From NCBI GenBank assembly GCA_965649765.1, contig OZ287748.1, forward strand, positions 41,292,001-41,356,000: a DNA stretch of 64,000 bases, given 5' to 3'. Position numbers and translations under genes: made by a program. Shown here one piece after another: positions 3,498 to 63,100 of this stretch (positions are counted from its first letter, which is position 1; each line of letters begins with the position of its first letter). The notes beneath the pieces are model-generated. The model did no database searches, was not told where the DNA came from, and worked only from the letters and a program-made list of their open reading frames with translations. Source of the stretch: Bispira polyomma. Its lineage: Eukaryota.

Positions 3498-3805
3498 CTC
3501 GTAAGTTGTTAATGTATTATCTTTTTGTTGGGAATCAAGTACTACCCATTTTATACTTGTTACATCATCCTCTACTTTTTGCACTTCTTCCATTTTAATG
3601 TCACCATCCACACTGCAGAGCCATTTGCCTAGTTCCTGTTTCAATATGGGATGTAACTGTAGCAACTCTGCGCTTTTGGTGTATGCAAGTGGACTGAGGG
3701 GTTTTATGGGTGATTTCAAAATGTGCATAGTGCCAGAATAGATAAGGTCCAAGAGAACACCTAGGACATCACTCTGAATGTCTGGAAAACTGAGGGTGGT
3801 ATTTC
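3498..3805 (-). CDS. BTB-zinc finger gene, second coding exon (C-terminal half of the BTB/POZ domain)
   Basis: Acceptor ttttag|GA at 3805 and donor GAG|gtaagt at 3498; 308 nt, phase 1 to 0. Encodes FPDIQSDVLGVLLDLIYSGTM...AELLQL, which is BTB-like. Confidence 0.85.
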
Positions 3806-3838
3806 CTAAAAGAGTAAGGCACAGTACAGTTATGCAAA

Positions 3839-3997
3839 CAGTCAAACCCCTGTAAGAAGCAATCTGATAAGTTGAAAAACCTGTATAGTAGAAGTTATTT
3901 CAAGGTCTCGCTGCTATATTTCAAATTTAAGTTTACCCTGTTAAGTAGAATTTCTGTTAAGTATTAGAAATATTTATGGTCCCTTCAGATTTGACTG
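3839..3997. mobile_element. Short non-autonomous DNA transposon (MITE, CAGT-ended family)
   Basis: Termini cagtcaaac...atttgactg followed by TA. Related copies lie at 38549-38723, about 39508-39631, about 34853-34998 and about 55441-55600. Confidence 0.55.
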
Positions 3998-4192
3998 TAT
4001 TACATAACTAAAACACTGATAAAACATTTACAGCTTTTTTTCACAGGAGGTATACCTAATTAAATTTAAGAATATTGAACTTAAGTTTTATCTTGGTAGA
4101 AATTGAGAATGTGAAAAGTTGAAAATAGGTATCCAGAAATTTTCCATATATATTTCCGCAACCACTGGATCTATACATATATAAACTAGTAC

Positions 4193-4361
4193 CTTGTAAA
4201 ACAAGTTCCATGATTACAGGACTTGCAACAGCTATGACCAATGAATGTACAGCAAACTGAGTAGTGTCTCCAGATATAAATGTCATGTCACACAGCTTCC
4301 CATCATTCCTTAACATTCTGAATGCTTCCAGCATAGAAATCTCCCAATACTCTGTTGCCAT
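4193..4361 (-). CDS. BTB-zinc finger gene, first coding exon (N-terminal half of the BTB/POZ domain)
   Basis: ATG at 4361, acceptor ttctttcag at 4391 and donor CAAG|gtacta at 4193. Encodes LRNDGKLCDMTFISGDTTQFAVHSLVIAVASP, the classic BTB start. Confidence 0.85.
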
Positions 4362-14635: not shown

Positions 14636-15075
14636 TTATCTTGATTCAGGTAAGGGAGTGCTGCGTCCACTGCCACTGTAACCACTAACAAGACTTCCCT
14701 GCCTGGTCATCACTACTTGCCTTCCCATCATATGATGCTGATGCTGATGGTGACTTTCTCTGCTACTTTCAGATCTCAGTATTCTGGGGCTGTATACACG
14801 TAAACTGGGTCTGCGATCCAGTAACAAGGGGCGTGCACTGTTAGGTGTATTACCACCAGTAGTTGGGGAGCTCATACAACTACCGCTATCTAACTGCAGT
14901 GGGTAGCTGTATCCTGGAGACCGCCGTGTGCTGCTACTATGGGGAGAGATCCGACTAAAGCTCTTCTCACTATAGAGGATCCTCCTGGACGGGACCTGGT
15001 TTTTAACTATGATCTCTCTACTGCCAGACATTTCAGACCTGCCATCACTTTTCAGTCGACCAAGCAGTGATCGCC
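14636..15075 (-). CDS. PKHD1L1-like distal terminal exon Z2 (intact Ser/Arg/Pro-rich cytoplasmic tail)
   Basis: Acceptor aaacag|GGCGATCA at 15075, phase 1, matching the T2 donor. Open to TAA at 14636: GRSLLGRLKSDG...STPLPESR*. Confidence 0.8.
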
Positions 15076-18000
15076 CTGTTTTTAATGAAAAAAACAACAA
15101 GTCGAGATGAATAGATTAAATAAAACCAGAAGTGATCTTCTTATTGTAAATGAAAAGAAACAAGTCAATTTGAATATATCTAAACAAGCAGCAGTAATCT
15201 TCCTATTATATGTTGAATATATCTAAACAAGCAGCAGTGATCTTCCTATTATATGTTGAATAGATCTAAACAAGCAGCAGTGATCTTTCTATTATAAGTT
15301 GAATATATCTAAACAAGCAGTAGTGATCTTCCTATTATAAGTTGAATATATCTAAACAAGCAGTAGTGATCTTCCTATTATAAGTTGAATATATCTAAAC
15401 AAGCAGCAGTGATCTTCCTATTATAAGTTAAAGAAACAAGTCAATTTGATTATATATATAAAACAATCAGTGTTCTTCCTATTGCAAATTAAAAACACAA
15501 CTCAATTAAAAAATATATAAAATAAGAAGTAAACTTCCTAGTGTAAGATTTAAAAACAACATCTGAATGCCTAAACGGAGATCAGATTCCTTCTCATCGA
15601 TGACTCTATCTCGCACTGTTTCCGAGATAACAGACGTTTCCCGGTAAGACTTGAAAAAGACTTGTAGGCCAAAAATGAGGTTGAATCGCTCTATGTCGTA
15701 TTTCTGAGATAACAAACGTTTCCAGAGAAGATGCAAAAATTCAAGATGGCCGCCAAAATTGTAAAATTTATGAAAAGTTGTCGTAGACCTTGAAAATGAT
15801 GCCCTGTGGTAAAAAAGAGAGGTTGAAATTGCTCCATCTCGCCCCGTTTCCTTGATAGCAGACGTTTTCATTTTCATTGGCAATATATACAAAACTTTAC
15901 AAGCTCTTAAAAATCTGTTTGACAAAAAAAGTGATGTTTGTACAGGAAATATCTTTTTTTGAAGATCCTGATGACATGAACAATTTTTTATCCTTGGTAC
16001 CTGAAAATAATCAGGAAGTCTGTAACATCTGTAGTTTTGGAGAAGAATCTGTTGAGGTCTACGCATCTCCATAGGAATAAGTCAGTGACTTTATCAGCTG
16101 ACTTCAAAATCACTTAGAAAATACAGGTATCTCTTAACATATATACAGCAGATCATTTTGCTTATGCAAACTTCTAAATACTACCTATAATACCCACTTT
16201 ACATGTGTGAATTTTAACAAGAGTGGCGCATGGGGCCACATCAGCAGATGCTTTTTTGGATGTTTCTGAAAGGAGAGGTATTAGAGTAAAATGTTCCTAT
16301 GTTGTGAGAGGATTTTGTTACAAGTTATAGATCGATAAATTATAATATGTACTATCCCAACCATGACAGCATATTAAATCTTAATTCATTAAACCCAGAT
16401 ACGGTAAATTTAGTAAATGAGGAAGAAACATTATTTCACTGACATATATTTGCATAAGGTATCTATCATATATTTATATATTTCATTTTAATAATAATCT
16501 AATTCACAAATTTAATTAATTGGACTGTCAAGCTAAAAGTAAATCCACCTTATATTATGAAAATTGTGTGTAAAACAAACGTGAAAGTATTTTACCGACA
16601 TACATTTTAATATATTTTTTATTGCCCTATATAATTAATATAAATACATTCCTTTATGCAAAACCTGTTAAATTAATAAATTGTTAAAAGGGTAAATAAT
16701 GACAACATATAAAAGAACAATGACTTTGAACAATACAAAGACATACACACACAAAAATAGCCCTCCCCCCATGACCTTGTTTATAAAGAGAGAAAAAGAG
16801 AGAAAAAAAGAGATCAAAGGAAAAGTGGCTGGTTTGCCCCTCACAATCAATATATAGGGTGACCATGACTAAGCTTTTTTCCAGGCACACAACCAAAATG
16901 GCAGCCAAGGCGGAGAGGAGGACAGTTATTTGTGTAGCAATTGGCCTTTGAGAAAAGAAAAGGCCTATATTGATTTTTATATGCAGCCAAATATATATTA
17001 ATTTGAAAAAACCAATCAAACATCTTTGCCTTAGCAATGGGAGGGGGGGGGGGAATACCCCCAAATGTAACAATAAGGGCTATAAATCCTAAACTAACAG
17101 AGATAACAAATTTTTTTTACCCTATCTACAAGACATAACAAGTACACACAAAATGTTTCAGTCCAAAGTCCCAAAGATGAGCGATTCCAGCCTGTTCTCA
17201 CAAATCACTAGGTGTATTCACTATTCCATGTGATCACGACAGAGATGTCACAACGGCACTCTGTTCCAGTATGACGCATCTGCTGCAAAAACTAAAATGC
17301 CTCTTTTATTTAATCAATCTCTCCCAACATGTTTGGATAACAAAGGTTGTACTGCATTATGGTCAGAGATTAGCATTTTATTTCTTTACATATATGTTAC
17401 CACAAAAATTAAATTTTCTGTATATCTCTGGTTATTCCTTAATTGCAGCCTATATTTTACCTGATTTTGTGCCCTTTAATAACAGCACTACAAAAAGGGC
17501 CAGAACAAGTCCTACAGCAACTACACCAAGTACTCCAATAACAGCAGGATGTAGTCCACCACTGTCGTCCAACTCCTAAAATATATGTAAAAAATATCAT
17601 GTTAAATTTAACCAAATAATGTCAAAATAAAACTTTGTAAAAATAATATTTAGTGTCACATTTCATAATTGTGTTGGTCTTAAAATACATATAAAAAGAA
17701 TATTTTGTGTCACATTTCACAAACTTTTTTTCTCATTTAATTGATGACTAAAAACTGAGTCCTTAAGTGCATTTAAAATAGACTAACTAATGTCTTCTAA
17801 AATACATATGAAAGAATATTTAGTGTCACATTTCATGAACACTTTTTTCTTTACAGTTGTAACGTTACTTTTCAGCACATCTTGTGTCATATCATGATGT
17901 AATAGACTGCTACTTAAAGGGGTTAGACTCTATTTAAAAGTCCTAGAGGTATAATTTGCAAACTAAATTGCAAGCACACTGAGGAGAGAACAGATTTAAA

Positions 18001-21000
18001 AGTACCAGACGTATAAATTACAAACTACATTGCAAGCACACTGAGGAGAGAACAGAAGTTCCTGTGCATTTGTAAACATCAGGTCACTTCTATTTGAGCA
18101 GTAAAGTGAGAACATCACCACTGCTGTGATATGCATATATGGTCATGCTCATAAGTCCTAACAAGAACAGAGTGCCTTGGTGGCCCCATCGTGAGAATCC
18201 TACTAGAAAGCAAGTTACTGCCCATGCATCTACAATGCGTTCTTGATGACAAAGAGTCCCGAAAATAGCGTACCAGTCGCTAGTTAATGCATTCCCTTGA
18301 AATGTCTTCTATTTTTGCTCACTCAAGATCGTTTGATAAAATATAACCTTAAATAGCACTTGTACAAATGCATTTTTGTAGAATCCTAACTTGCGTTTTC
18401 ATATTTCTCTGTTTACAGATTAGGTGTACACTTTAACAATCAAAATATTTGACATATTCTATACCATTGATGCAAGATGATAATGCTCTACTAAGGTTGG
18501 TTTTTCCTGGAAAAGACTTTCACTAGCAGTATTGAAACTGACGTCATACCGCCTTGAATGTGTGTATTAATTAATAATACCACAGTTTCCAAGTTCATGA
18601 ATACCAAATATATTCCTGTTACTAGTCTACACCACTACAGCAGGAAGCTTACATTTTAACCATAATAAGATTAAAATGTTATTGACCCTTTATTTGTATA
18701 GACGGGAAATGATATGAATTAGGAAACCAAGTTAGAAAAGCCAGATGGAATAAATCACCCTGAAATGGTGAAAAATATTGTAGTCCTCTGATTGACCGAT
18801 TAAAGTGTACTTGCCTTTCAAGGAACAGATGATGCCCCACTTTTATTGATTAACCAATAGAGTATACTATACTTCATTCCTAAAACGCTCACATGATATT
18901 CTGAGCATGAACATTCCTGTTTTGGAAGTAACAGCATTCTCATGCAAAAACTCTATAATTACAAATATTAAGACAAATGAGATACTTTAGCACAATTATT
19001 TGGGTACTGCGTGAGTGTAACAAACCTCCTCATCAGCTGGCCACCTTTCTTCTCCATCAACTTCCATAAAAGGCTCGGCCTGAATACTGTGGTTATCATA
19101 GGTGAAAACCAAACCATTCTCCAGGTCTATCCGCAGTGATTCTATAGCGCCCTCTACTGCACTAGTTTGACCACCAATAAAGAAGCTAACCACAATACTA
19201 CCTACAGGTAGAAGAAGTAAATCTCCTATCTAAACATCCAGGGGTAGTATTCTCGAACAAGTGAAAATTCATTACTTAATTAGATTTCAACTGTACTGGT
19301 GTTCTTGATTTTTTACTCACTGAGATACAATTTGTAAAAATTTTATTGTAATTTATCTTTTTGTAAGACAAATACTTACCTTATCCTCACTAAGTGCTTT
19401 TATTCATTTTGAATAATTGCTTGACCAAAAGTCTTTTTTATAAAAACTATTCTTGTTTCTTAATTTTTACCTGTCTCTCGACAACGAGGCCCGCGCATGC
19501 GCAGGAAGTGTTTTCACTTCTGTTAGTGCTTGCACGCCTCAGATTCAATTTTGGAAAGCCTGGCCACACAAATAAGTGGGGTTTGGTGGGAGGGCATCTG
19601 ACTAGTGAGGATAAGGTAAGTATTTATCTTACAAAAAGATAAATTACAATAAAATTTTTACATTTTATTGCGATAAATATCCTTACCTTATCCTCACTAA
19701 GTGCTTGATTACAACCTTTATGGTGGAGGGTATTTGTGTGACAGAACCTCACCTAAAGGATTATGTGTAATGCACTTTGTCGAGAGAATTAAGAAACTTG
19801 AACTGTAGAAGAAACTTAGAGATAATTAGGTCAGCTATTACATAGGCCTACTGTAATTCCCTATTGTAAATCAGAAATGATTAGGTAAACGTTTCATAGG
19901 AATACCTTAAACAAGACTATTCTTACTCATTGTACTCTACTGTACTAGTATTCTTGTATTTCCTTATACTTGACAGATTAAGCATATGATTAGCAACTGA
20001 GAAGGATGAAGCTATGGCTTACCTAACTCATCTATTGCTATGCTGATCCTCCTCTTGGGAAGATCCTAAATATTCTTTATAACGATGATCCCCCTCTTGT
20101 GAAGATCGTAACATTGGTGCATCTGTACATGTGGTGTGATGAACAAATTGGTTGGGCAGTTGCTGTCATCTGTTGTCAGGTGTTACCGTCATGATGATGG
20201 CAGCAATTGCCCAAGCCGACACTGGTCTTCTTAAGAAACTAGGAGGCCTGAAATAGAAGATAAACATATATCATCAGCATATAGTGAATCCATGCTGTAG
20301 TTAAGTACATTTTCCAATTCCTAGAAACGATAATGTGTCACAAGAAGTCTAAAATGCACTCACTAAAGTAAGGTGGACAATGTGTTGTGCAGAGACTACC
20401 GGACATAAGGAAAAATCTGCATCATCCCTAGATTGCCAAGCTACATCTTTCAAGTAGAAGTTAGTGAAGGTGTTATGTGACTTCCAGAAGCAAGCTCCCA
20501 GTATCTGGTCTAAAGAGACCCCCTTTAAAGGCCAATGAGGCCACCATTGATCTCTAATCGTGGGCCTTAACTTGACACAGATTTTCAATTTCAGTGTCAG
20601 CATGCTGGTAGGCCAAAATGATGATTTGCTTAAGCCAGGATGAGATAGTAGATCTCTGTATATCTTTACTAAAGCCCTCCCGGAAAGATATGAATAGTAA
20701 ATGTTTTCCTTTTCTGAGATCCTGAGTACGTTTGAGGTAATGTTTGAGAGATCTCACAGGGCACAAAGTGATCTCTTCAACTAAGGTGTCATCCAAAAAT
20801 GGACTCAACGCTGGGATGACCACAGGCTTAATGGTATCAGGACCCTGGGAAGCCAATTGGTTTTTAGCTAAAAATACTGGTGAGGGAGCTACTGTGACCT
20901 CTTTCCAGTGTGGTTTATGTTTGAGTGATTTAAAGGTCCAGGCATGTATTTCATCTCTTCTTTTGCCAGAAGCTAAGGCCATCAAAAATACCGTTTTGAA

Positions 21001-24000
21001 GGTAACAAGTTTCAGGGAAGCCTCTTTGATTGGTTCAAAAGGAGGCTTAGTTAAAGCCAATAGTACCAATGATAGATCCCAACTAGGAATACCTCTGTCT
21101 TTGGTAGGTTTGTCCCTATAGAAGCTAACTAGAAGTCTGTTCAGATCAAGACTTTTCGAGACTTCTAGTCCTGAGGTGCCTAAATGATCTGCAATAGCAG
21201 TTCTGTATCCGGCTATTGTAGCAAGTTTGACATTTTGTTTCTGAAACAGGAATAGTAAGAAATCTGCTATTTGAGCTATACTAGCTGAGGAGCTGACCAC
21301 CTTATTCTCTGAAGCCCATTGTTCAAATAAGGCCCACCTTGATTCATACACTCGTCTAGAGGATGGTCTCTGAGGTGCCTTAATTCGTTCTTCCACTAAT
21401 CTGGAATACTGGGATTCTGTTTGCATGGAGATTCCAGTATCCAGACATGGAGATTTAGATATGGCAGGTTTTGGTGATATTGGAGGCCGAATGGTTGCTT
21501 TAGCAGATGAGGCCACTGAGGTATTAAGAGTGGTGGTCTTATCGATACATCCACTAGATCCCAAAACCATGTCATCCCTGGCCATCCCGGAGCTAAGACC
21601 ATTATTCGACACTGGTAAGTCAGAACTTTCTGAACCAGCTTGGGTAAAAGAGGTACTGGACAAAAGGCATAGCCGTCCAGACCCTCCCAGGAGATGTTCA
21701 ATGCATCTACCTCCAGGGCATGGGCATCTGGTATTGGGGACACATACAGAGGTAGCTTGTGATTTTTGGATGTGGCAAACAGGTCTACTTGAGGTGTGTA
21801 TAAGCTTTGACATAGGAGCTTGAACATTTTTGGGTGGAAAGACCACTCGGTTTGAATTATTTTGTCTTTCCGAGATAGGCTGTCTGCTATCACATTCAGT
21901 GACCCCTGTATATGACGGGCTCGAACCCTGATCTTTCTGGGGTTGCAAAATGCAAGTATCCGCCAAACCATGAGACACATCTCTAGTGAACGAGTGCCCC
22001 CTTGTTTGTTCAGATATGACACGACAGATGAGTTGTCTGAGGCTATTAGAACTCTTTGTTGCCAAATTTGGTTTTGGAAAGTTTTTAGAGCAAGATATAC
22101 TGCCTTTAGTTCTAGCAGGTTTATATGTAAACCTCTTTCTAGACTTGATCAGTGACCACTGGCGGTCAATTTGCCTAGATGTGCCCCCCAACCTGTGTTG
22201 GATGCGTCTGTGAATAGAAGAAGATTGTGCTCTCTTGGATGCAAATCTTCTCCTATCATGACATTCAAGGGGTCTTCCCACCATTGAAGATGGTTCCTTA
22301 ACTGGGCTAAAACTGGGATCTGCATGTCCAAAGACTGGGGATGTTTCCAATGGGATTTTAGGTACCACTGGCAAGGTCTCATATGTAGCCTGCCAAACGG
22401 TACTTTTTTGTCCATGCTGGCCATCATGCCTATCAAGGACATTAGTATTCTGGGAGTAATGACCTTGGAGTTTTTGACCTTGTTCACTAGAAGCAAGAGT
22501 TTCGACCATTTCTTTTCGGTTGGTTTGACTAGGCCCGCCTTTAAATCGAAATGGTACCCCAGGAAATCGATCACTTGAGTGGGCTGGAGTTCTGACTTTT
22601 TGAAATTGATTAGCCAGCCCATTTGTTGTACTATTGAAATCATCTTCGGTATCTGTATTCGACTCTGTTCGATAGATGGGGATCGAATTAACCAGTCGTC
22701 TATATACTGGTGAATTCTGATTCCTTGTGACTGGAGTACTAGCTTTGTTTCTTTCACGACCCGTGTAAATTCTAGTGGGGCTGTGGCAATGCCAAACGGA
22801 AGCGCCTGGAACTGATAAGACTGTTGATCGACATTGAATCGCAGGAATTTTTGAGAATTTGGATGGATCGGTATATGGAAGTAGGCGTCTGTTAGATCTA
22901 TGGACGCTACCCACTCCCCCTTTCTCAGTGAACTGCGAATAACCTCTGCCGTCTCCATCTTGAATGTTGGGACATGGAGATTTCTGTTTAAGACACTCAA
23001 ATCGATCACTGGCCGCCATTTTTTCAACGGTTTGGGTACTAAAAATAGTCGGCTGTAAAACCCTAAAGTTGTTGAATGTTTTACCTTGCAAATCGCTCGT
23101 TTTTCTAGCATTTGAGCCACACATTGTTTGAGAAAAGCCTGCTTCTCTTTGTCTTTGTAACCGCTCAAAACATCCGGGTTTCTGGTTAACGACACTCTGA
23201 TTTCCGGCAATATTTGGTACCCGTATCTCAGAATTTGCACAACTCGGGGATGGCACTTAAAATTTTCCCATACCTGCCTGTAGTCTGCTAAGCGGCCCCC
23301 ACCAGATCCTTGATTGTCACGTACGCCGCCCACTACCCCTTGCGCCTCGTGTGCTGGTGTGACTCTGGTAACCCGTGGACTTCTTGAAATCACTTCCACG
23401 CCCTTTCGACCAGTTCTGGCTCTGATTGGGCTTGAATGTAGAACTTTTACTGTGGTAAGTCTGTTGATAACTCTTGTTGTAAGACGCCTTGGAATCAGAG
23501 TATCTGGGTCTTTTTGGAGAAGGTTGTTTAAATCTGGCTTTCGCCTGTTTCTTCTCAATGTCATTCAAGGTGGTTGGATTGAAAAGATCAGCAGTGAGGA
23601 AACCCTTCCTCCTAAGTCTGTTAGAGTCATGTTCATCCAAGGGCGAACAGCATGTCTTTAAAATGGAATCTCTATGGGCTAACTGTAAATTGCACGCCAA
23701 GGCAATGGAAGTGTCCACTGTTGTCTCCAGTACTTTGTCCACTGACCCCAAAATGGCGCCAGCAATTTGGAGGTTATCGCCCACCTTGATAGTACGTCTG
23801 GTGGCCTCATCTTCCTTCACTAAATCCGCCAAGGCCAGTACATTTGCGTTAGAATCAGAGAGAGTCTTGTCTAATGCCCTTACAAAATGAGATACATAGC
23901 TCAGTACCTGTACGTTCTCTCTTAACACCGTCTCCATTTGGGCGACCTGCTTCATAGGAATATGGACATTATAAGGCTGTGAGGTGTTTTTCGCCGTGAT

Positions 24001-27000
24001 GCATTTGAAGGCGTCCTGACACTTCGGCGCTGTGATGGAAAATGCATTAGAGGTCGATCGGTAGAACCTCATGGCTGGTCTGGAGTAGTTGATAAAACTA
24101 CCTCTGTTGATGGGCGTCGAATCTAACACTTTAGTATTCTTAGGATCGGGACGTCCCGCAGCCAGGTCTTCATAAAACTTCCAACGAACCACTACCTTGT
24201 CAACAGGCGGCAGAGTAAGGGGAAGTACAGGTTGTTTCTGACTTCTATCTCTGTTACCAAAGATTTTCGCAGGTTTTTTGGAGGTTTCTGACGGGGTCTC
24301 AAGCTCCAACAAGGATCTCACTGTCCCCAAAAGCTGTCTATAAGAGGGGTCCTCCTCTTTGTCTACCACGTGGTCACTCTCGTTCGTCTGATTAACCTCC
24401 ATGGGTGACTCAGATCTCTTCCTTCTATGTCTAGAAGACTGGACCTCTTCTTCGGACTCCTCATTCCTCGAGAAAGTACTGGTTTTTGAGGACCTGCCTC
24501 TACCTTCGACTTTCTCCAACCTTTGAGAAAGGTGACCTAGCTCCGCTAGAATTAACTGAAGAGAATCATCTTTATTCATGGGCGTTGGAGATGCTTCATC
24601 CAGAAGCTTATCATTAAAGGCATCAGCAGCCGGAAGCTTGTGAAACTTCAACCTTCTAGCTTGAATACGTCTGGTCTGGTCCGTCGTCATCTGCGTACAT
24701 AAGTAACAATCCTCAGGACTGGAAGACACACAGACATCAGCACCAAGACCCTTGTCCCTGCATGTAAGGCAATGACCATGGTGGTCAAACTCATACACTT
24801 CATGTCCACACTTCGGAGCAAGCCTCTGACAGGAGACGGAAGAAATCAGTTCGTTTTCCGCCATAGCACAGTAAATACTCATAAAAAAATAAAACCCTAT
24901 CTCAAAACCGGTCAATATGGAAAATTGGCCGAGCAAAATGGAGGTCAGCGTTAACCGACGACCAAAATGAATCTGAGGCGTGCAAGCACTAACAGAAGTG
25001 AAAACACTTCCTGCGCATGCGCGGGCCTCGTTGTCGAGAGACAGGTAAAAATTAAGAAATAAGAATAGTCTTTATAAAAAAGACTTTTGGTCGAGCAATT
25101 ATTCAAAATGAATAAAAGCACTTAGTGAGGATAAGGTAAGGATATTTATCGCAATAAAAATGTGGTATTCTTAATAATTACTTTGTAGATGCAAACTCAG
25201 ATGAAAACTCAGAATCATTAAATACCAATATTTCAGCCACTACTACACTGAAATTAGTAAGTTGTTGACAATCTTAAAATTGTATGATCATGATGTTATG
25301 TTATACCCCCACATATTAACATTGTTATCTTTTATAATAACCTCCTTTTTGGATAAATGCAAAGCCTCTGGGCAGAGATTTTATTATAGACATTACAGTA
25401 TGTCGGACTAAAAGCGCACATACCTTCAGACGTGGTGAAGTTATCCATGAATAAATCTTCAGAGAGATATTTGTTTATAAGAAAGTTCTTCATTACTGCA
25501 CTGAAAATGTCTTCTTCATCTTGAACTATCTCACGAAAGTTCTCTTTAAATACAAAACGTATTTCTCGGATAACTTCCACTATTGGTAAGCTTTCTGTCG
25601 TCACCGAAATCAAATCAGAGTAGACCATAAAGCTGTATTCACTGACTGGGCTGGTCACACATTCAAAGGTGAAAGCCAGATCTCCGTATTTGTTAAGTGT
25701 GAGGTCGCTGAAGGTCACTACACTATTCTCATTGATACTGACTGTGTTCTCTCTCACACTGTATATGCCAAGGTAGCCAGTCTTATCATACTTCTCAACG
25801 GTACACGTCCATGTATGACCCTGTATAAAACAGTAAATTCATTGATAGTTTAACGGAAAAACATGAAACACTGAATGATGTTATAGTCCTAGGTAGCCAG
25901 TTTTATCATACTTCTCAATGGTACATGTCCATGTATGAGCCTGGATAATACAGAAAATTCATTGATAGTTAATGGAAACACATAAAACACTGACTCGTAT
26001 ATTATAGAAATCACATGATACTATAAAAGGGAAATAACAGAGTTAACTTAAAGGGATTTCAATCTAGAAGGTATCTTTATAAATTAATTAGATTATTTCC
26101 AAATTTCCAGTACACTGTATAAATAGAAACAGCTGTCACTCAGCTAAAACTAATAGTTTTGGGGTCCATACACCTACATACCTCTATTATTCAAAATTCT
26201 ATTATATCAATAATAAATTTTACATGAACTCACTTCCACTCTACCAAATTCACATTTTCCTATTGTTTATAACAACATATTTCTTCTATTACATAGAACA
26301 ATCTTTAAGGTATTTGAGCACACACATGACATACCTTCCAGTGTATATTACTAGCTCTGGCTTCAGTCTCTGTATCTATCAGTTCTAGTGTGATGTCCAA
26401 GCTTTGTCCTATTGATATGCTCCTTGGCAGGTCCATCGTTCTTGCTGACAAGACTCTGCTGTTTATGGTGACCGGTCCCATTAACAGTCGAAGGAAACTG
26501 ACGTTACTGGGTCGTGTCACCTCAAACTCAATCATATATCTACACACAACAAGAAACACAATACAGTAGAACTTCTTAAGTCGAACATCAAGGACCCTAA
26601 AGCAACACCATAACTGTACATTTCCATGTGCACAGCTTATAGTTTCGGTCATATTTCTGTAAGAGATATCATATACCAAACATGGTATATATTCTAAAGG
26701 TTGTGTTTTTCTTCTTTCTGGTAAGTTTCTTAAGGCTGTATCTTTCTTATTTCTTGACTAACTTTTTCAAAATTTTAACTAGAATAATAAGATGAAAAAT
26801 TTGTTTCCAAATAACCTTATAAACATTAAAGAAAAAAGGAGTATTTTATTATTATTTATTATTATGAATTTTTCACACGCTTTATTGATACTAGGCATCT
26901 TCTAAAGCGCAACAACAGAATTATTGGTTCAATCATTAAGTCCATGGACATTGCAAAGTCGTAAGGAAGGAAGTGGGAACATGCACGAGGGAAGATAAGG

Positions 27001-33000: not shown

Positions 33001-33945
33001 GCATATCCAAACACAACGTTTATCATCGTAGTACCAATGAGCAATGCCCTCTCATCTGTGCCACTTCCACTTACTAATTGTGCTGTAATCTGCCATGGTG
33101 AACTGATAGATCCCAACATGGATATTGGGTCTCCCTGTAATCACCAACAATAGTGCTCCATGTTATAAAACTTAACATACATATATAGTTTAAACATTTA
33201 TAGAGTGCCAAATTGATGAGAACATCCTGTAAGGTGTTGATATTCAAAAAGGGAAGGTCTAGGGCCAAGGTCGTTGCCAAAAAGCATCCAAAAGGGAAGA
33301 GACTGAGAATTTGAATTTGGATATTTAACGTCCATTCTAGTACCTTTTAGTAGGTTATATTGGGACCGGTAGTTGGAAACGCTGGAGGAAACACTGAATA
33401 CAGTCGGTCAAGGTTCTGCAGAGAAACCAGCGGCCCACAGTAAGGAACTACCACCTTTCCCACATAGGCATCGATGGGATTCAAACTCATGCCGCCCAGA
33501 GGTGAGAGACCAGTGATTGTGAAGCGCAATGCTTGCTAACCACTAGGCCACCGCAGCCCCGGAAGAGACTGAGAAAGGGGTAGGCCAATCTGAACAGGTA
33601 AGTTTTAAGATGGTTTCTGAAACCAATGATTGTATTGTGTGATCTTTTGACAGACAGTCTGTGGGAGCTCGTTCCATTCAACAGGAGACGCGACAGCAAA
33701 GTAGCAATTTTCCCTGGTAATGCTACTGGACTTAATACTGTATACCAGGAACTGTCACTAAGTTACAATTTTTGAGAAGTTCACTGAAATTAATTGAATT
33801 TATTAGCTATAATAGTTAAAAGTTAATTCCTGGTAAACATTTACAGCTGTTCTGTAGTACATTATATTAAAAATATTAAAGTTATTTGTGTGTGAGAGAG
33901 GATTTGTGTTGCTCCAACAAATGCCTTGTATACATATTTTTAATA

Positions 33946-33990
<45 letters not shown>

Positions 33991-48900: not shown

Positions 48901-51130
48901 GTTTTAAATGAAAAGAAACCAGTCAAGATAATTTGGTATAGGAAACCAGAATTAATCTTCCTATTATTAATTTAAAAAAAAAACAAGTTTCTATATATAT
49001 AAAACATTAATCAGGAACCTTCCTATTGTAAGTTAGAAACACAAGTCAATATGAAGAATATGTATCAATAGGAAACAAGCAGTGGTCTTCCTTTTGTAAA
49101 TTAAAATAAATAAGCCAATTCATACATATATAAAACATGCAGTGATATTCCTAATGTATATTAATACACAAGTCAATCTAAATATACAGTGCAAACTCTA
49201 TTATCCAAACTTCTCTTATCCGAATATTCGATATTATGAACACATTTCCACCCTCCCAAATTTATTTTTTCCTAATGTTTTACAGATATGCATAAGCAGC
49301 ACATCATCTTTTATTCCAAATTCTAAATATGACCTGAATATCTACTTTTCTAACACATTTTTCTAACACATTAGATAAACCTTCCAAATAAAAATATAAG
49401 AAAGATTCTACTGCATTATGCTGTGGGTTATCATTAGCTTTTATCATCCATTATTTACATATATGTTACCACAAAAAATAAATTTTCCGTATATATCTAG
49501 TTATTCTTTAATTGCAGCCTATATTTACCTGATTTTGTGCCCTTTAGTAACAGCACCAGTATAAGGGCCAGAACAAGTCCTACAGCAACTACACCAAGTA
49601 CTCCAATAACAGCAGGATGTAGTCCACCACTGTCGTCCAACTCCTAAAATATACGTAAAAGAGATATGTTAAATTTAACTAAATAATGTCAAAATGAAGC
49701 TTTGTAAAAAGAATGTTTAGTGTCACATTTCATAAACATTTTTTTAGCAGGTGAAAACATTAAAAATGACAGTCAGCCGAACAGTTGAGCTTATGAGACA
49801 CTCTATATACATAAATTTTACACTTAATTAAGTTACAAATATTTACAAATATACATGGACACTGATTTTAACAATGTATACCACATATATTTGCTACCTG
49901 TGCATCCAAATTACAAATATAGTTAACATTTATGAAATAATAAAAAGTACTGATACTACATGTGCATACAAATCACAAATATATAGTTACCATTTAAGAA
50001 ATAATAAAAATAAGTACTCACAAAACATGTGCATACAAATCACAAAATGTGCATACAAATCACTAATATATAGTTACCATTTAAGAAATAATAAAAAGTA
50101 CTCATACGTCCAAAATCATATTTCTAGATAGTTCAAAAATTTCCGAAAAATATTTGCTGAAGTTTGAGATATTTTCTTTTTCTGTAGATTTATTGATTTT
50201 TTCAAATATTGACAAGTTATCCCATGTATGATATTTTTGCTTCATAATATTTTCGAGAGTTTAATATGAAAACCCTTCATGAAGTGGTTGGAAGCAATCA
50301 ACCTGGCAAAATTAATTAGGGGCCAGATTAATATTTCTCAAATATATTTTTGTCGGATCAGTTGTCGGGCGAAACCAGAGAAAGAAAAATGTCACAAATA
50401 CCTTTGATGTGGGAGTACAAGGGTAATTGAAGTTAGGGTCAATATGATAAAGGACACTCTAAAAGTAGATCCTAAAGTCATAGACCCTATGTTCTCCAAA
50501 TCAAACTCTCCGATTCAACCATCCCTTGCTTTGAAGCGAATAGATGAAGACTTTTTAATATGTTCGAACTCTCCAGACAATAGAAATGTCTTCACAGCTC
50601 ACACCTGTGAAATCTCAAACCATGATGAGGCCTCTTCTGCTCATGCATCACTCTTCCAAAACCAGAGGTAGCAAAGGCAACCCACAGAGTATATATTGGT
50701 ATTCGTATGAATCGCCAGTGGGCAAAGAAGATTTCTACGGCCATGATGATGATGGTGAATTCTCAGCCTCAAATTAAGGAATAACACATTCCAAAGCACG
50801 GTATACAGTAAGTTTTACTATTACTGGAGGAATAGTAACATGAATGATTTAAAAATGTACTGTAGTAATTAGGCAAGGTCTAAACCTTTTAAATTTCTTT
50901 TTTTATAAATACTGGTACAAATACTACAAGTTAACAACTAGTATCTACACGTTAGTAACTAAAAAAAAAAACAATTAAAAAAAAGTTAAAATATCGACAA
51001 GTTCTAAAGAGGTATCTACAAGTTAGTAAATAGTATCTACAAGTTAGTAAGGAGTATATACAAGTTAGTTACTAGTATCTACAAATTACTAACAAAACAA
51101 ACAAAACATAAAAGTTAATAGAAACTCTAA

Positions 51131-51169
<39 letters not shown>

Positions 51170-54100: not shown

Positions 54101-57100
54101 ACTCTATGGAGGACTTACTTTATAAGAAATAAGAATTTGGTCAAAAGCTCTATGGAAATGAATTAAAATGGTATTGGCTATATAAATGACATTTTGACTG
54201 ATAGACGTAGGCCAGCGGGGTACTGTTAGTTTGTTAAAAAATATTAAGTGAAAATGACTTTTGGTGATTTTTATAGTTTGACCCATTCAGTTTCAAGCGA
54301 CTAGGTAATCAAAGACTTGAAACAAAGTTGGCAGAAAATAAAGTTAATCATTGGTTGGTACAAATCATTCTACAACAAAAGAATGTCAGCAACTGGGTGT
54401 ACAAAACAATTAGATCACTAGCAAATTCCTCTAGAGGTAATGAATAAATTGGACAAACCTACTTGGGACTAATTTAACACATATTGATTAGAAAAAGTTT
54501 TACTTAAATCACTTTCAATGTAATCTAGAGAGTTCTATGCATGCTTTCTAGTACAAGATTCTACTACGTTCATTACCAACCAAAAAGTTCTTCGAAAAAT
54601 GCAATCTGCGATATTTGCGATAAATGTTGGTTTTGTAAAGAAAATTTTGAAGGTATAGAACATCTTTCTGGTATTGCTTGACAGTACAAACTTTCTGGTT
54701 TCTAGTCTTGGATACAATGAATGCATCCGTAGAAATTAGAAACGAAGTAAAAGATCTAAACGTACTTTTGGGTGGAGCAAGGAGTAGATATAAAGACAGT
54801 TTGAACTTTCTTTTTACCTTGGTGAAAAGTATGTCTATAGAGCAAAAGCTTAAGAAGATATATATATTGGTTAAACATTGATGCCTTCAAGAATGTGTTA
54901 AAATATTATCACAATGTTGAAAAGTGGATAGTCGAAAATTTATATAGTAGTGTGAGGGGTTTCATAAAAAAATAGGAACTGCTAAGTTGAACCATGTAAA
55001 ATATTAATTAATGAACTTAATGTACAAATATGTAGTTTATTTCAAGTACCAGTAACCATTTGCATTCTTTAATTTAAAGTAATGAAATGTAATCTATATT
55101 ACTTATTTTTTTTTAATTAAAAGAAAAGAAATATAAATATATATATATACATATAAACATAAAAAAGTTTATATATGCAATAACTTTGTACTTTATCTGA
55201 TGTAAAGGTTAAATTTATTTTTAAATGCAATCGTGTGAGATGCCTACATTTGTACAGCTCTTGGTGAAAGGTTTTCACAGGAAGATTTATCTAACAGTAA
55301 GGTCATATCTGCAAACTGTACTGTCAGTTTATATATTATTCTATTCATTTTTCATAACCTGTGCAATATAAAAAAGAATATTTTCTATCTCTACAATGTG
55401 TGCACTCATATATTTATTGAATTGTTTTCTTTTTACAATACAGTTGAACCCCTGTAAGTCGAATCTCAAACGATCAGTAGAAATGACTCTACTAAAGCAG
55501 GATTTCCACTTGACACGATAGATTTGAACAGAAAATGCATTGGTGGGCCTGCAGATTTCTTTCTACATAAAAGATCATTTAACTTGAAAGAGTTCCACTT
55601 TCAAAGATATTTGAAATTTCTAGTATAATTTACAAAGTAATTGCAAGCAAACAGAAGTTTCTTGGCATTTGTAAACATATGGTTACTTTTATTTGAGCAG
55701 TAAAGTGGGAATATTATCTCTGTTGATATGCAAATATGGTCCTGCTCATCAATCCTAAAGATTCTAAATTTACAACAAAAAAGATATTGGGATAAATGAG
55801 ATTCTTTAGCACAAGCATTAGGACACTAGTTGATTGTAACAAACCTCCTCATCAGCTGGCCATCTTTCTTCTCCATCAACTTCCATATAAGGCTTGGCCT
55901 GAATACTGTGGTTATCATAGGTGAAAACCAAACCATTCTCCAGGTCTACCCACAATGATTCTATAGCGCTATCTACTGCTGTAGTTTGACCACCAATAAA
56001 GAAGGTCACCACAATACTACCTGTAGGTAGAAAAAGAGTAAATTTGTTAACAAAACATCTAGGGGTAGTATTCTCTAGCGAGTGAAAATTCGTTATTTCC
56101 TTAATTATTTTTTACAAACTTGATTTCCTACATACTAAGAAATGAGTGGTATTTTTGATGATGACTTTGTAGATGAAAACCTACTTAGAATCATAAAAAA
56201 CCACTGTACGCCCCACATCTTTCCTTACGACCTTGCTATGAACATAGACTTCACGATTAGATCGATGATTCTGCTGTTGCACTTTAGAAGATGCCTAGGA
56301 TCAATAAAGTGAGTTAAAAAATGCATAATAATATAATAATAATACTATTAATATTTCAGCAGCTACTACACTAAAATTGGTGAATCTCCCCATTGGGTAG
56401 TGTTGGGAATCTTAAAATCGTGACCTGTAGCAGATAATTATTGTTTTGTTTTGTATTGTATTGTGCATTTTTAACGGGCCTTATTGATGCTAGGCATCTT
56501 CTTAGGCGCAACATCAGAATCAATCAACCAATGAAAAAATGAAAAACACAGCCAGGTCGTAAGGATGGATGCGTCAGCGCCCAGTAAGAGGACTACGGTG
56601 GATAGGCGAGTCTGAAGAGATAGGTTTTAAGCTTTTTCCTAAAACCCAAAAGTGTTTCAAACAGTCTAGGTTCAGCTGGAAGACTTCCATAAACTAGGTG
56701 CGGCGGATGCTGTTAATGTGAGGAAGAAATGAAAAAGCAGGGTCGATAGTGACACCTAGGTTTTTGACCTGGTCTGAATGTTGAATCTCATTACGCACCA
56801 GTGTGATTGGAAAAAGTGATCACTGTGTTTTTTATTTCCAATTAGGATGAATTCAGTTTTGTCAATTATGTGCTAATTCATGTAAATAAACATGTAAAGT
56901 TCAACACATATGTACATATGATCATGATTGTTTTTCAACATTATGTTATACCTCCACATATCGACATTGTTATCTGTTGTTATATTGTTTTTAAGAGATA
57001 TTACAGTATGTACTCAAAGCAAACATACCTTCAGATGTAGTAAAATTATCCATAAATAAATCTTCAGAGGGATATTTGTTTCTGAATAAGTTCTTCATTC

Positions 57101-60100
57101 CTGCACTGAAAATGTCTTCTTCATCTTGAACTATCTCACCAAAGTCCGCTTCGAATACTATACGGATTTCTTTCATAATTTCCACTATGGGCAAGCTATG
57201 TGTTGTCACTGAAATCACATTGGAGTGGACCACAAAGCTGTATTCACTGTCTGGGCTGGTCACACATTCAAAGGTGAAGGCCACATCTCCGTATTCGCTG
57301 AGTGTGAGGTCACTGAAGGTCACTAGGCCAGTCTCATTGATACTGACCGTGTCTTCTGTCACGTTGTATACACCTAGGTAGCCAGTCTTATCATACTTTT
57401 CAATGGTACAAGTCCATGTATGACCCTGTATAAAACAGTGAATTCATTGAGATTTCAAAGGAAACACATGAAACACTTGATGATATAAAAGTCCTAGGTA
57501 GCCAGTCTTATCATACTTCTTAATGGTACAAGTCCATGTATGACCCTGTATAAAACAGTGAATTCATTGAGAGTTTAGAGAAAACACATGAAACACTGAA
57601 TGATATAAAAGTCCTAGGTAGCCAGTCTCATCATACTTCTTAATGGTACAAGTCCATGTATGACCCTGTACAAAACAGTGAATTCATTGAGAATTTAGGG
57701 AACACACATGAAACACTGGAGATATAAACTTCCTAGGTAGCCAGTCTTATCATATTTCATAATGGTACAAGTCCATGTATGACCCTGGATATTACAGTGC
57801 ATTCATTAAGAGCTAAATAGAACCACATTATCTAAATTACATTTATTTGGGCTTTACGTCACTTTTAACAGCTTAGGTCATATTTTGACGGAATCACATG
57901 ACACAGTAGTACTCCTGTGAAACTACAGTAGAACTGTATTGTTCCACATAGAAAGGAATTGATTTATCAGAGCTCTACTTAAAGAGATTTCACGATAGAA
58001 AGTATCTTCATATTTAAATAAGATTATTTACAAAGAGAGTAAGTAGACTCTCTGTATGTAGAGCCGTAACTCAAATGTTAGCACAGCTAACACTAAAATA
58101 GTTTGGTGGTCCATGCACTCAGATACAGCTGAACCTCTATCACTTATAATTACAGCTGTAACTCAAATGTTAGCACAGCTAAAACTTAAGTAGTTTGGTG
58201 GTCCATGCACTCAGATACAGCTGAACCTCTATCACTTATAATTAGAGCTGTAACTCAAATGTTAGCACAGCTAAAACTTAACTAGTTTGGTGGTCCATGC
58301 ACTCAGATACAGCTGAACCTCTATCACTTATAATTAGAGCTGTAACTCAAATGTTAGCACAGCTAACACTAAAATAGTTTGGTGGTCCATGCACTCAGAT
58401 ACAGCTGAACCTCTATCACTTATAATTAGAGTTGTAACTCAAATGTTAGCACAGCTAAAACTTAACTAGTTTGGTGGTCCATGCACTCAGATACAGCTGA
58501 ACCTCTATTATTTATACTTGTATTATTTCCAGTATTACATGAACTCACTTTCACTCTCCCAAATTGACATTTTCCTTCTGTCTATTAGCAACACATGACT
58601 CTTCTATGTCATGAACTCTTTTATTACCCTAATCAAATTTTACACTCTGAACATAGAGGTTTTACTCTATAGAATAATACAGGAGGTATTCAAGCACACA
58701 AATGACATACCTTCCAGTGTATATCACTAGGTCTGGCTTCAGTCCATGTATCTATCAGTTCTAGTGTGATGCTGAAGCTTTGTCCTATTGATACACTTCG
58801 TGACAGGTCCATCGTTCTTGCTGACAAAACTCTGCTGTTTATGTTGAATGGTCCCATTGACAGTCGGAGAAAACTGGCTTCACTGGGTTGTGTCACCTCG
58901 AACTCAATCATATATCTATAAATAAGAAGAAACATAATACAGGATAAATAGTTATTTTGAGACATACAATGAATACAGCAGAGTGTAAAATTGTAAATAA
59001 ACTGGCTAATATTTTCAAAGTACATGCTTCACGTGACACAACTCACATACCAAGAAAGAATCAATACTGAGTATTGTGCCTGACAAGAAAAAAGGAAAAA
59101 ATCAGCATCATTTTAAATGAATTCGTTTTCCAATAAAAGCACAAAAAACAGGGATAATTTTAGAAAAACATTAAGTTACACTCTTAACATAGTTTCAATG
59201 TTCGATTATATATTAATGTAATTGTTTTTAACAATGCATTGGTTGAATATGTTTGGCTTAAAGGGGTTTTATGAACTACGATTTCAACAACTTTGTCAAT
59301 GATGTTGGAAGATGCCTGGCATCAATTAGGCGCATTAAAAATCTATCATATCATATCATTTTACTGTATATTGATGCTAAATACAGTTGATAATCTTGAA
59401 CAACTAGTATGCACTGCTTTACCCCACCAGTAAAACTGCCAGTTATGATGTGACCAAAACAATGCATTTAAAGCGATGTTAAACATAATCAACCAATCAA
59501 TATACCTTGGGAAATTAAGGTATCCATACAAACAATTAACAAGCATTTTGTTAAAATCTAAAAAAATCTATTTTAGTTTGCGAATGTTGACACTATAATG
59601 AAAAGGCTTAATCAGTATTTCAAAATAGGTTACACATAAATTCAATAGAACCATTTTAACATCATAAAAAATATATAATTATGACAAACAAATATAATTC
59701 AAATCTCAGTTAATATCAAAAGTGAAGAGTCACTTTACGACAATGACTCTTCCATTTTATGTGGGAAGCTAGACTTGGTAAAGGCCGCTGGTTTACAAAA
59801 CAGATTTTAAACGTTGACAAATTACTATGTTCTGATTACCTTCACCAGTGAACTGTCTGTTTTGTGTGATATGACACAAATGTGTGAAAAGCGACATTAC
59901 CTCAAATTAACACTTAAACTTCTATTTTAACAATCTTTTTACCCTGTTCCGCTGTGAGTAATTGTCAGGTCTGTGAAATTAGCATATCCAAACAAGAAGC
60001 CCATAGTCAGAGTACCAGCGAGCAATGCCCTATCATCTGTGCCACTGCCATTCACCAATCGCGCTGTAATCTGCCATGGTGAACTAATAGATCCTAACTG

Positions 60101-63100
60101 GGTTACTAGGTCTCCCTGAAATCACCAACAATAGTGCTCCATGCTATAGAATATGACATATTATATACTGTATATACCGGGCAGAAGAAATGTTAGCTGG
60201 AAAAACAAAATCACTAATTTACAACTGTTGACAAGTTCACTGGAATAATTTTTCCACTATTGGCTAGTATTTTGTTAAAATATCAATACAAATTCAAATT
60301 TCCATTGCAAACTAGTTTTCACTGTCATAAGGCATTGGCTATAAGAGCTTAAAATAATTCCTGGTAAAAATATCCAGCTTTATGGTTATTTCACAAAATT
60401 AAAATGCGAGTTACAGTCAATAAAGTTAGTTCTTGTATATAGTTTTCCAAACTTACAAATTACTTGGGCCGTTAAGGAAAGGATCCTAATAACCTATAAG
60501 GCCTGTTAAAATCTAGGCAGTATATTATTATCAGTTAGTGTTTAGAGCTTTCTAACTTTGGAAAGTTAGAAAACTTCAAAGTTATAAATCAGCCTAACTT
60601 TAAAACAACTCAAATGCCTACAATAATACATTGAAGTATCATAACTTTTGTGAGACAAATCTTTGTATTTGACGGATATTTTTGAAATTTTTTTTATCCT
60701 ATTTTAGGCCACAGAATAAAAATTATTGTATGAAACTTATGATACCAACTTACTCTTTATTGCATAAATATATACTTGTAATGCAACAAAACATCAGTTT
60801 TGTGAAAGGAACCAATAGGATTGCAGGTCTGAGGGGCACTAATATCACTAGCAGCCCTTGGCCTTGCTGGGTAAATCAACATTCAAAACTATGGAGTCGG
60901 TATTGTCATGACAATCTGCTTGCTAGTAATTCCCTGCTTTCTGGTAATAATTGTCAATATGCTAAACCTACCAGTTCGTCTGTCACTTTTAACGCTGGCG
61001 TTATGTCAAATCCAACTCCCTCGACCCCTTCACTCCCGGCTGATACTGCTCCCAAGAGACTTGGTATCCGGATTGATGTCAAGGTTACTGTGCCCTCCGA
61101 GAGACTTTCGCTGACTTCCTCCCATGCTGGATCATCCGAAGAAGGCATAGGCTCGATCACATTTGCTCTGAGTAATGTTATATTTAGAATACCACTCAGT
61201 GTGCCCAGCTGAACTTCTGTGATTATCTTACTTGAGATATTAAGAATGTTACCCTGTATCATTTCTGCGGAGTCAGTTCCGTTTTCTAAGTTCAATATCG
61301 GCGGCTCACTGATTTCGAGATCCACCGATCCCTCGGATTGTCTCTTTTTCTTCTTCTTGGATTCCTCCCTGACAATATTGACCACTTTTATTCTGGAGGG
61401 ATCTATCCCCAAGAATGTGGCCAAGTTACCCACTAAATTCTCCCCAAAGAACTCGTCGATTGTCATAGCGGGTACACTGAATGATATGACCACTATAGGG
61501 GCTATCACAATGTCGACTGGGCCCGGCCCTTTTAGTGTCACGTACAACATTTTAGACTCGCGGTCAAAGTAATTGGTTCCAGATACTTGTGTAAAAGTAG
61601 GTTGATATTCAGACTCATATGATGGTTCACTGTATACAATTTGTCCATCATCATTCAGATCCGAGTTGGCAGGAGACACGTACACACCATTTTTGTAAAC
61701 ATCTAGGCGCTGTGGATTTGCGTAGTACACTGCAATTGTTATTGCTTGGTCAGCATCCGTATTCAAGAGGTAAAAACGCGTCTTTTGAGGATTTGTACTT
61801 GACAGGTAAATGTCGTAATGTTTATCTGAAAAAAAAATCACATGTCACAGTCAAATATGATAACACAATGTACAATCCTGTTAAAATATTCAGTAAGAGC
61901 CTCCACTAGACTTGCCTGTTGCTGTTGTGTCTGCACAAGGTGGAGCTAGTGGTACTTTAATCAATGCTACAATGTGAAGACACAGCAAACTTCCGAAAAC
62001 AAGTGTACAGATTTCCATTTCTCGCTGTTTTGAATTATTTTGTAAACCGTGATTACCAGCAGTTGAATTTTTATAGAATTGGCTAGGTGAAGCTGCAGTC
62101 ACTTTTAACAATGGCACTTTACTCAATACTCGTTACAATAGAAGGTATGCATGCAGACATGTTATGTAGTTTTGAAAGGTGACAACAAACTTCAAAATAT
62201 TTATATAAATATGAATTAATAAAATGAAAACATTTTTCATTGCTTTTCATACAGTATAAATTTAAATATTGTTAAATGGAGTAGTGTGTATTCATGTTGT
62301 TACATGACTTGGATCTAATATGGCTGCAGCCACAATAGATATTGCTCTTTGGTGAGGTGTTAAAAAATCAAATAAAATGCCTCAATTAGTAAAATTCTGA
62401 CTTAAAAAAAATAATATTTGTGTGCACTGACTAAAATTAAATAGCTTTGACGAAATAAAAATAAATATTATAAGGTGAAAATCAAACATAGATAACGCAC
62501 ATGCATGCCTGCTGAAGTATTTATTTAAACAGATTACAGTTCATTTAAAAGTGGTGAGGTCATTTGACATTTAGCACTCTCAACCATTCAAAATGGCTAT
62601 AACCTGAAATCCATAATTTTATATTTCATCGGACTGGATCCGAATACACAGAAGTGGGGGAATTTGGGAGGTCACTTAACAGTCCATAGTCATGTATGTG
62701 GCTAGCTGTAGTAATGAGACACATTGATAAGCCACTTTAATTTGCTTCTTGCCACTTTACTAGCCGATTACTAGGCGATTCTTTAATTTCCCGCAATTTA
62801 CAGAGCAAAAAATAATATGGGTCAACTCCTCTCCAAAGAAAATTTGACCATCAAGTTTTAACAAACTTCTTGACAAACTTAGCACCAAACCAATTCATCA
62901 AAGAAAAAAAAAACAAATTTATTTTAATAAGATTAATATTTCTCCTTATATAACATAAGTGAATATTCTGTTGCAACATAATGTAGTGACATTCCTATAG
63001 GGTCTGTCATGCAATCAAGATTAACTGAAAAATAAGAATTCAAGGTAAGGTACTTATAATGTCAGTTGCAACAAGTTTGCCCTGTTAAAAACGTGTCCAA

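What the first reader, a model, noticed from the sequence alone, without database searches (positions are those of the whole stretch)
14636..61080. Variable-length stalk system: a four-fold, phase-symmetric five-exon cassette with two alternative membrane anchors and tails in a fibrocystin-L-like gene
Seen: in transcription order the gene reads X2(A1)-B1-C1-D1-E1, T1, Z1, then [A-B-C-D-E] x3, T2, Z2. Every E exon ends in phase 0, and both the A exons and the TM exons start in phase 0. All cassette exons keep their AG/GT sites and open frames although the copies have diverged (exon C1 vs C2: 12 of 68 aa differ by hand count). The only coding indel is one whole codon in D2, while the surrounding introns are full of indels and TE insertions. 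Inference: the distal block has no signal peptide or PKHD1L1 N-terminus of its own, so it is probably reached by splicing E1 to A2 across T1/Z1. One locus could then encode receptors with 1 to 4 modules of about 352 aa and two different tails. Equivalent exons could also be joined across modules (for example B2 to C3) in frame to give chimeric modules. I do not know of this arrangement being described for the family, but I could not search the literature.
Basis: partly seen in the sequence, partly recalled or inferred. Interest (0 to 1): 0.88.

Follow-up and report, generated by a model that had tools for sequence, protein, structure and literature searches.

The report
Quadruplicated stalk in a fibrocystin-L gene
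An invertebrate copy of the giant surface receptor fibrocystin-L has repeated its membrane-proximal stalk four times and its membrane anchor twice; the extra copies are kept intact by selection, so the gene probably makes a long form and perhaps a short one, but no RNA data yet show this.

Summary
The anatomy is real. Four 352-aa five-exon modules and two TM/tail exon pairs have intact splice sites and open frames, and short-read DNA contigs support the assembly. The gene is a fibrocystin-L (PKHD1L1) homolog. Each module is two Ig-like domains plus a SEA-like domain with a GSIVV/GSVVV-type motif. Modules evolved under purifying selection (omega about 0.55; p about 2e-4 for the distal three). 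A relative and 31 of 32 homologs carry one module.

New points: only Z2 keeps the ancestral tail, while Z1 is frameshifted. A decayed E remnant lies just upstream of A2, so A2 lost its own upstream exon long ago yet stayed intact. Both favour a long, four-module product made by splicing past T1/Z1 (about 0.68). Whether T1/Z1 is a live alternative end or decaying is open. Forms with 2-3 modules and chimeric modules have no support: phase symmetry follows automatically from tandem duplication. No RNA run was available, so no junction is shown. The scan noted this only on this window. Verdict: a new variant of a known kind, of moderate interest.

The parts
63439..63684 (-). exon X1 (conserved PKHD1L1 region)
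60972..61825 (-). exon X2: first SEA/MAD-like region with a polybasic KKKKKR site at ~61358; last 105 nt = A1
   Evidence: position compared with mouse site in PMC11527881 (inference)
59943..60115 (-). B1 (Ig-like domain 1)
58711..58915 (-). C1
57029..57425 (-). D1 (Ig-like domain 2 and first half of SEA-like domain)
55845..56020 (-). E1 (second half of SEA-like domain; G|SIVV across D/E); closest to E4
55391..55844 (-). proximal 450 nt of the E-T intron, homologous to the inter-module introns up to the duplication junction
49529..49643 (-). T1, transmembrane exon
48517..48898 (-). Z1, tail exon; in-frame stop at 48609 after a 10-nt gap; ancestral frame continues untranslated to 48517
39726..39797 (-). 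E0: decayed 3' remnant of an E exon (21-28% mismatch, 3-4 gaps, GT donor kept)
39354..39458 (-). A2, entry exon of the distal block
37844..38016 (-). B2
36740..36944 (-). C2
35936..36335 (-). D2 (one extra codon)
35304..35479 (-). E2
30543..34741 (-). module 3: A3 34741-34637, B3 33134-32962, C3 32324-32120, D3 31612-31216, E3 30718-30543
19026..30184 (-). module 4: A4 30184-30080, B4 28879-28707, C4 26539-26335, D4 25820-25424, E4 19201-19026
19333..25159 (-). retroelement with ~190-bp inverted terminal repeats and an RT ORF, inside intron D4-E4
17461..17575 (-). T2, transmembrane exon
14636..15075 (-). Z2, full ancestral-type cytoplasmic tail

Best explanation
A fibrocystin-L gene duplicated its last ectodomain unit (from mid-X2 to ~450 nt past E) in tandem and expanded it to four copies. 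A further duplication or unequal exchange placed a copy of E-T-Z after module 1 and left the old upstream E as a dead remnant. The distal block is still used: the pre-mRNA is spliced past T1/Z1, most simply E1 to A2. This gives a type I receptor whose stalk is ~1,057 aa longer, with four Ig-Ig-SEA units, each carrying a possible self-cleavage motif, and the ancestral tail Z2. T1/Z1 is either an alternative last-exon pair giving a one-module form with a shortened tail (about 0.4 overall) or a decaying, mostly skipped copy (about 0.28). Shown: exon anatomy, homology, selection, ancestral state, and the fold of a homolog. Inferred: the history, every splice junction, and SEA cleavage.
For: ML omega is ~0.55, with 2dL=18.7 against omega=1 for four modules and 14.2 for the distal three alone. 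Under neutrality modules 2-4 should carry ~7 stops, ~4 splice-site hits and ~20 frameshifts; none is seen. E0, 267 nt upstream of A2, has 21-28% mismatches and 3-4 gaps, whereas live E exons differ by 3-15% with no gaps. No A-D, X1 or X2 remnants lie in 39.5-48.5 kb. The A2 acceptor region matches A3 at 29/30 nt while that intron is otherwise ~72% alike. The single-module ortholog's tail aligns with Z2 to its last residue, including two segments Z1 lost. Upstream exons of a full fibrocystin-L are collinear over ~85 kb.
Against: No RNA run holds the region. Long-form splicing must bypass a T1 exon with good splice sites and several AATAAA hexamers after Z1 (such hexamers occur at chance frequency in this window). 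The A acceptors have poor pyrimidine tracts. Omega of 0.55 is relaxed and records past selection only. The date of the T/Z duplication is loose (pS about 0.10; flanking introns 7-25% diverged).
Confidence: 0.68

Rival explanations
1. The distal block is an orphan: the 3' end of a former multi-module gene or allele that lost its 5' part and has only recently become silent. The gene now makes only the one-module T1/Z1 form.
For: No expression evidence. Default splicing would take T1 and end at Z1. Omega is only ~0.5.
Against: E0 has decayed heavily while the adjacent A2 and all 16 downstream exons are intact, so disconnection from E0 is old. The sole product would then carry the frameshifted tail.
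Confidence: 0.12
2. The distal block is a separate transcription unit with its own promoter or first exon in the 8.7-kb TE-rich gap, making a headless Ig-SEA repeat membrane protein.
For: A2 and A3 begin with ATG; E0 keeps a phase-0 donor. A crude scan found 7 hydrophobic ATG..GT candidates at about 4 places, against 0-3 hits in shuffles.
Against: A2 does not encode a signal peptide, and by inspection none of the candidates looks like a canonical one; one lies in a recent repeat. Without one, ~1,050 aa could not be translocated ahead of T2 (established knowledge).
Confidence: 0.1
3. The first reader's fuller reading, an extension of the best explanation: regulated skipping yields 1, 2, 3 or 4 modules and chimeric modules (for example B2 to C3), a small combinatorial system.
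For: All such joins are in frame.
Against: Frame compatibility is inherited from the duplication and needs no selection. No RNA data. Inter-module introns are short (360-560 nt), which favours consecutive splicing (inference).
Confidence: 0.1
4. Mis-assembly or tandem placement of two haplotypes.
For: The three runs may include the individual that was assembled.
Against: Copies differ by 10-20% with private insertions. One short-read contig spans 45190-49225 with no difference in three runs, and T1 and T2 contigs have the same depth as it (94, 98 and 97 in X2, where nearby pieces fall to 53-62). The runs hold 81-84% of the words of 34400-39900.
Confidence: 0.02

Closest known systems
Invertebrate and amphioxus fibrocystin-L (PKHD1L1), e.g. 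Branchiostoma lanceolatum PKHD1L1 (P0035), Lingula anatina fibrocystin-L (P0039)
   Same: Collinear IPT, G8 and beta-helix region, then polybasic SEA/MAD region, Ig-Ig-SEA unit, TM and tail; GS[IV][IV]x motif.
   Different: They have one unit and one anchor; 31 of 32 full-length homologs with this SEA domain have a single copy.
Argopecten irradians fibrocystin-L-like XP_069115782.1 (P0007)
   Same: Independent duplication of the membrane-proximal unit in the same family.
   Different: Only Ig2+SEA is doubled, with a Thr-rich linker; two copies; no TM exon found between them.
Vertebrate PKHD1L1 and PKHD1
   Same: SEA/MAD domain with a predicted or known cleavage site (PMC11527881, PMC13424714); mouse Pkhd1 is extensively alternatively spliced (PMC13424714).
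   Different: The vertebrate PKHD1L1 proteins in my set lack Ig2 and the second SEA domain and have a 9-aa tail (PMC13424714); no verified PKHD1L1 isoforms are reported (PMC11527881).
MUC16 and MUC1 SEA mucins
   Same: Tandem SEA domains in a stalk (MUC16, ~56) and the GSVVV autoproteolysis site (MUC1) (PMC4456727); fold match to MUC16 SEA5 at Z 7.5.
   Different: Unrelated proteins. Here the repeat is Ig-Ig-SEA. MUC16's analogous site was not found to be cut (PMC4456727), so the motif alone does not prove cleavage.
Repeat-number and alternative-anchor receptors (CR1 long homologous repeats, Dscam alternative TM exons, PCDH15 alternative tails); from my own knowledge, not checked here
   Same: Multi-exon tandem units lengthen an ectodomain; alternative 3' exons give different anchors or tails.
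   Different: Here an anchor-plus-tail pair sits inside the repeat array, so the choice of 3' end would set stalk length.

Membership tests
fibrocystin-L / PKHD1L1 | IPT/TIG repeats, two G8 domains and beta-helix regions in order | tested here: met
   tblastn of two full-length homologs gives collinear hits from residue ~125 to ~4340 over window coordinates 146 kb to 57 kb, covering 64-70%; domain names come from the homologs' Pfam annotation
fibrocystin-L / PKHD1L1 | best protein relatives are annotated fibrocystin-L | tested here: met
   X1 is 46-78% and X2 28-43% identical to annotated homologs
fibrocystin-L / PKHD1L1 | N-terminal signal peptide | not tested
   first exon not located
fibrocystin-L / PKHD1L1 | single C-terminal TM helix and tail | tested here: met
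   T1 and T2 each encode a hydrophobic segment; any one product would carry one
SEA domain | ferredoxin-like beta-alpha-beta-beta-alpha-beta fold next to the membrane | tested here: met
   AlphaFold model of the scallop homolog's domain, pLDDT 91; top matches TROP-2 Z 9.1, SorCS2 8.2, MUC16 SEA 7.5-7.6, but other ferredoxin-like folds score 6.5-8.0; linked to the window exon by exon
SEA domain | match to a curated SEA sequence profile | tested here: not met
   no Pfam SEA hit for 32 homologous segments or window exons; divergent, SEA-like
autoproteolytic SEA (MUC1 type) | G-S-V/I-V-V at the beta2-beta3 turn | tested here: met
   GSIVV in all four modules; G invariant and S in at least 90% of 32 homologous segments, at the hairpin in the model
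autoproteolytic SEA (MUC1 type) | cleavage between G and S | not testable with these tools
   needs expressed protein
alternative last-exon isoform system | both 3' ends transcribed and polyadenylated from one gene | not testable with these tools
   no RNA run
functional tandem exon-array duplication | copies under purifying selection with intact splice sites | tested here: met
Dscam-like combinatorial splicing | mutually exclusive use of duplicated exons | not testable with these tools
   only frame compatibility shown

The most novel reading that the evidence does not exclude
One gene switches, by choice of last exons, between a short-stalk receptor with a truncated tail and a receptor projected ~1,050 residues further by three extra Ig-Ig-SEA units with serial self-cleavage points and the full signalling tail. 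This would couple reach, shedding and signalling in a single splicing or polyadenylation decision.
Probability: 0.35. Interest if true: 0.65.

Novelty: new variant of a known kind. Interest (0 to 1): 0.48.

Why it matters
The function of fibrocystin-L is poorly understood in any animal, and SEA-domain cleavage is proposed for the human deafness and kidney-disease members (PMC11527881, PMC13424714). This locus shows that the membrane-proximal unit can be multiplied and kept by selection, and a scallop did something similar independently, which suggests that stalk length matters. It also captures how an internal duplication that includes the anchor exons can turn into alternative 3' ends. The mechanisms involved are known from other receptors, so the interest is for specialists unless RNA data show a regulated switch.

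Tried and rejected
The search for homologous proteins with exon D1 returned nothing although a 61% relative exists; treated as a tool miss. The ESM Atlas gave no hit for X2. Pfam and PDB sequence searches did not name the module. The poly(A) hexamer count is at chance level. The 3' flanks of Z1 and Z2 are alike for only ~45 nt past the ancestral stop, and neither matches the relative, so which copy kept the old 3' UTR is unknown. T+Z shows pN about equal to pS (0.11 vs 0.10), so selection on T1/Z1 could not be shown; T1 has two silent and no amino-acid changes against the relative, too few to decide. The organism could not be placed: the X2 tree is the quick version, the careful search did not finish, and it resolves only orthology and paralogy. 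One script was killed and one E0 slice was mis-cut (redone). PMC5326570 was not held. Paper searches found no description of this arrangement, in a library that lacks most subscription journals. The joined search and fold were left out, and homolog proteins were folded instead. Joined codons were used only inside local scripts for statistics.
Full report
Observation. A self-comparison of the window shows four blocks of similar sequence and two copies of a downstream pair. I fixed all exon boundaries on the minus strand. Each module has exons of 105, 173, 205, 397 and 176 nt, giving 352 codons with no stop; D2 has one extra codon. The 19 separate cassette exons have AG and GT; A1 is the end of the large exon X2. 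E donors, A acceptors and T acceptors are all phase 0. A genome-wide search found four D copies here and one in a neighbouring paralog, and only two Z copies.

The gene. Exons upstream match full-length fibrocystin-L proteins of amphioxus and Lingula in order over about 85 kb. The closest annotated proteins are all fibrocystin-L. A convergent paralog with one module lies just left of the window. A contig of a related animal carries both genes in the same orientation, and a quick tree pairs each with its counterpart. The organism was not identified.

The module. AlphaFold on a scallop homolog gives two beta-sandwich domains and an alpha/beta domain; structure searches match Ig-like folds. The last domain folded alone has pLDDT 91. 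It matches TROP-2, SorCS2 and MUC16 SEA domains at Z 7.5-9.1, a modest lead over other ferredoxin-like folds. The window's D and E exons align to that homolog separately. GSIVV spans the D/E junction in all four modules, and the G and S are nearly invariant in 32 homologous segments. The motif resembles the MUC1 GSVVV self-cleavage site, but the analogous MUC16 site was not cut (PMC4456727), so cleavage is inferred only. This domain is additional to the SEA/MAD-like region with a polybasic site in X2, which by position corresponds to the one described in mouse (PMC11527881).

Ancestral state. The relative has one module followed directly by T and Z. It is 58-60% identical to each module, and the tree is (M1,(M2,(M3,M4))), so the expansion postdates the split. 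About 92 kb of the relative's locus was not seen. Of 32 full-length homologs with this SEA domain, 31 have one; a scallop protein has an independent Ig2+SEA duplication with no TM exon found between the copies.

Selection. Nei-Gojobori ratios are 0.37-0.57, against 0.83 expected under neutrality with transition bias. Codon models give omega near 0.55 and reject 1 for four modules (2dL 18.7) and for modules 2-4 alone (14.2). Aligned introns carry 7-19 frame-breaking gaps per kb; the exons have none. Neutral evolution of modules 2-4 would give about 7 stops and 4 splice-site hits before counting indels (P about 1e-5).

Two findings that change the picture. First, the tails are unequal. The relative's tail aligns with Z2 to its last residue. 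Z1 lacks a 15-residue segment and is frameshifted by a 10-nt gap, losing about the last 30 conserved residues. Contigs from three DNA runs reproduce 45190-49225 without a difference, so the frameshift is not an assembly error, and T1 and T2 occur at equal depth. These runs come from at most two samples of one study and may include the assembled animal. Second, a remnant of an E exon with its GT donor lies 267 nt upstream of A2, followed by the usual inter-module intron. The match is well above chance (score 67; shuffles at most 34). It has 21-28% mismatches and 3-4 gaps, against 3-15% and no gaps among live E exons. So A2 once had its own upstream E, which died long ago while A2 and everything after it stayed intact. 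No other remnants lie in the gap.

History (inferred). The intron after E1 matches the inter-module introns for about 450 nt, right up to the A junction, which defines the first duplicated unit. The AG used by A2-A4 has two possible sources: the E1 intron has TTGTAG in the same register, and the relative has a CAG codon at the same coding position. It was therefore probably recruited rather than newly made. E1 is closest to E4 (6.8%), T1 and T2 differ by 4.3% and Z1 and Z2 by 12.3%. This fits a later event that copied the terminal E-T-Z behind module 1.

How it most likely works. The distal block needs a signal peptide and has none, has lost its local upstream exon, is under selection, and holds the only complete tail. 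Splicing past T1/Z1, most simply E1 to A2, explains all four facts (0.68). The conserved A2 acceptor (29/30 nt as in A3) points to A2 as the entry, though with weak statistics (P 0.01-0.06). T1/Z1 may be a working alternative end or a decaying copy; its splice sites are intact, but its sequence changes fit neutrality. No RNA run holds this region, so no junction has been seen.

Verdict. A real, selected, lineage-specific expansion of a known receptor's stalk, with a duplicated anchor inside the array. I found no paper describing it, but its mechanisms are familiar from other genes. New variant of a known kind; interest 0.48, rising to about 0.65 if a regulated short/long switch is shown.

Noticed in passing
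window 19333-25159: 5.8-kb retroelement with ~190-bp inverted terminal repeats, overlapping long ORFs and an RT domain; DIRS-like by anatomy, recombinase not detected by Pfam. An 88% identical copy lies in an upstream intron of the same gene (about 95.4-101.4 kb in window coordinates).
   Followed up: partly
window 57373-57812, also near 31550-31870 and 25760-26000: A 120-bp tandem repeat copies the D acceptor and the first ~60 nt of D several times; read on from a copied acceptor next to D1, the frame soon stops. These are possible decoy acceptors that splicing must avoid.
   Followed up: no
window 55391: The E1 intron has TTGTAG in register with the A acceptor, followed at once by an Arg codon and a stop; if used, it would give an anchorless, secreted form.
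   Followed up: no
G000:C1 ~41.268-41.287 Mb (L010-L012), + strand: Convergent fibrocystin-L paralog with one module, its own TM exon and a different tail; same arrangement in the relative. More distant homologs lie on C12 near 6.0 and 6.14 Mb.
   Followed up: partly
L019:80366-90825 (Argopecten irradians): Independent duplication of Ig2+SEA with a long Thr-rich linker; the second copy has GNVIV in place of the GS motif.
   Followed up: partly
alignment A3: A membrane-proximal SEA-like domain with a conserved GS[IV][IV] motif is general in mollusc, brachiopod, crinoid and amphioxus fibrocystin-L, absent from the vertebrate proteins in the set, and not recognised by Pfam.
   Followed up: yes
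window 3486-4409 (-): Exons of a BTB-domain gene (PF00651, E 7e-6 for one piece).
   Followed up: no
window 43290-44596: 1.3-kb RT-bearing repeat with at least 39 copies of 99% identity across the genome: a very recent expansion. Neighbouring pieces are at about half depth in run X2.
   Followed up: no
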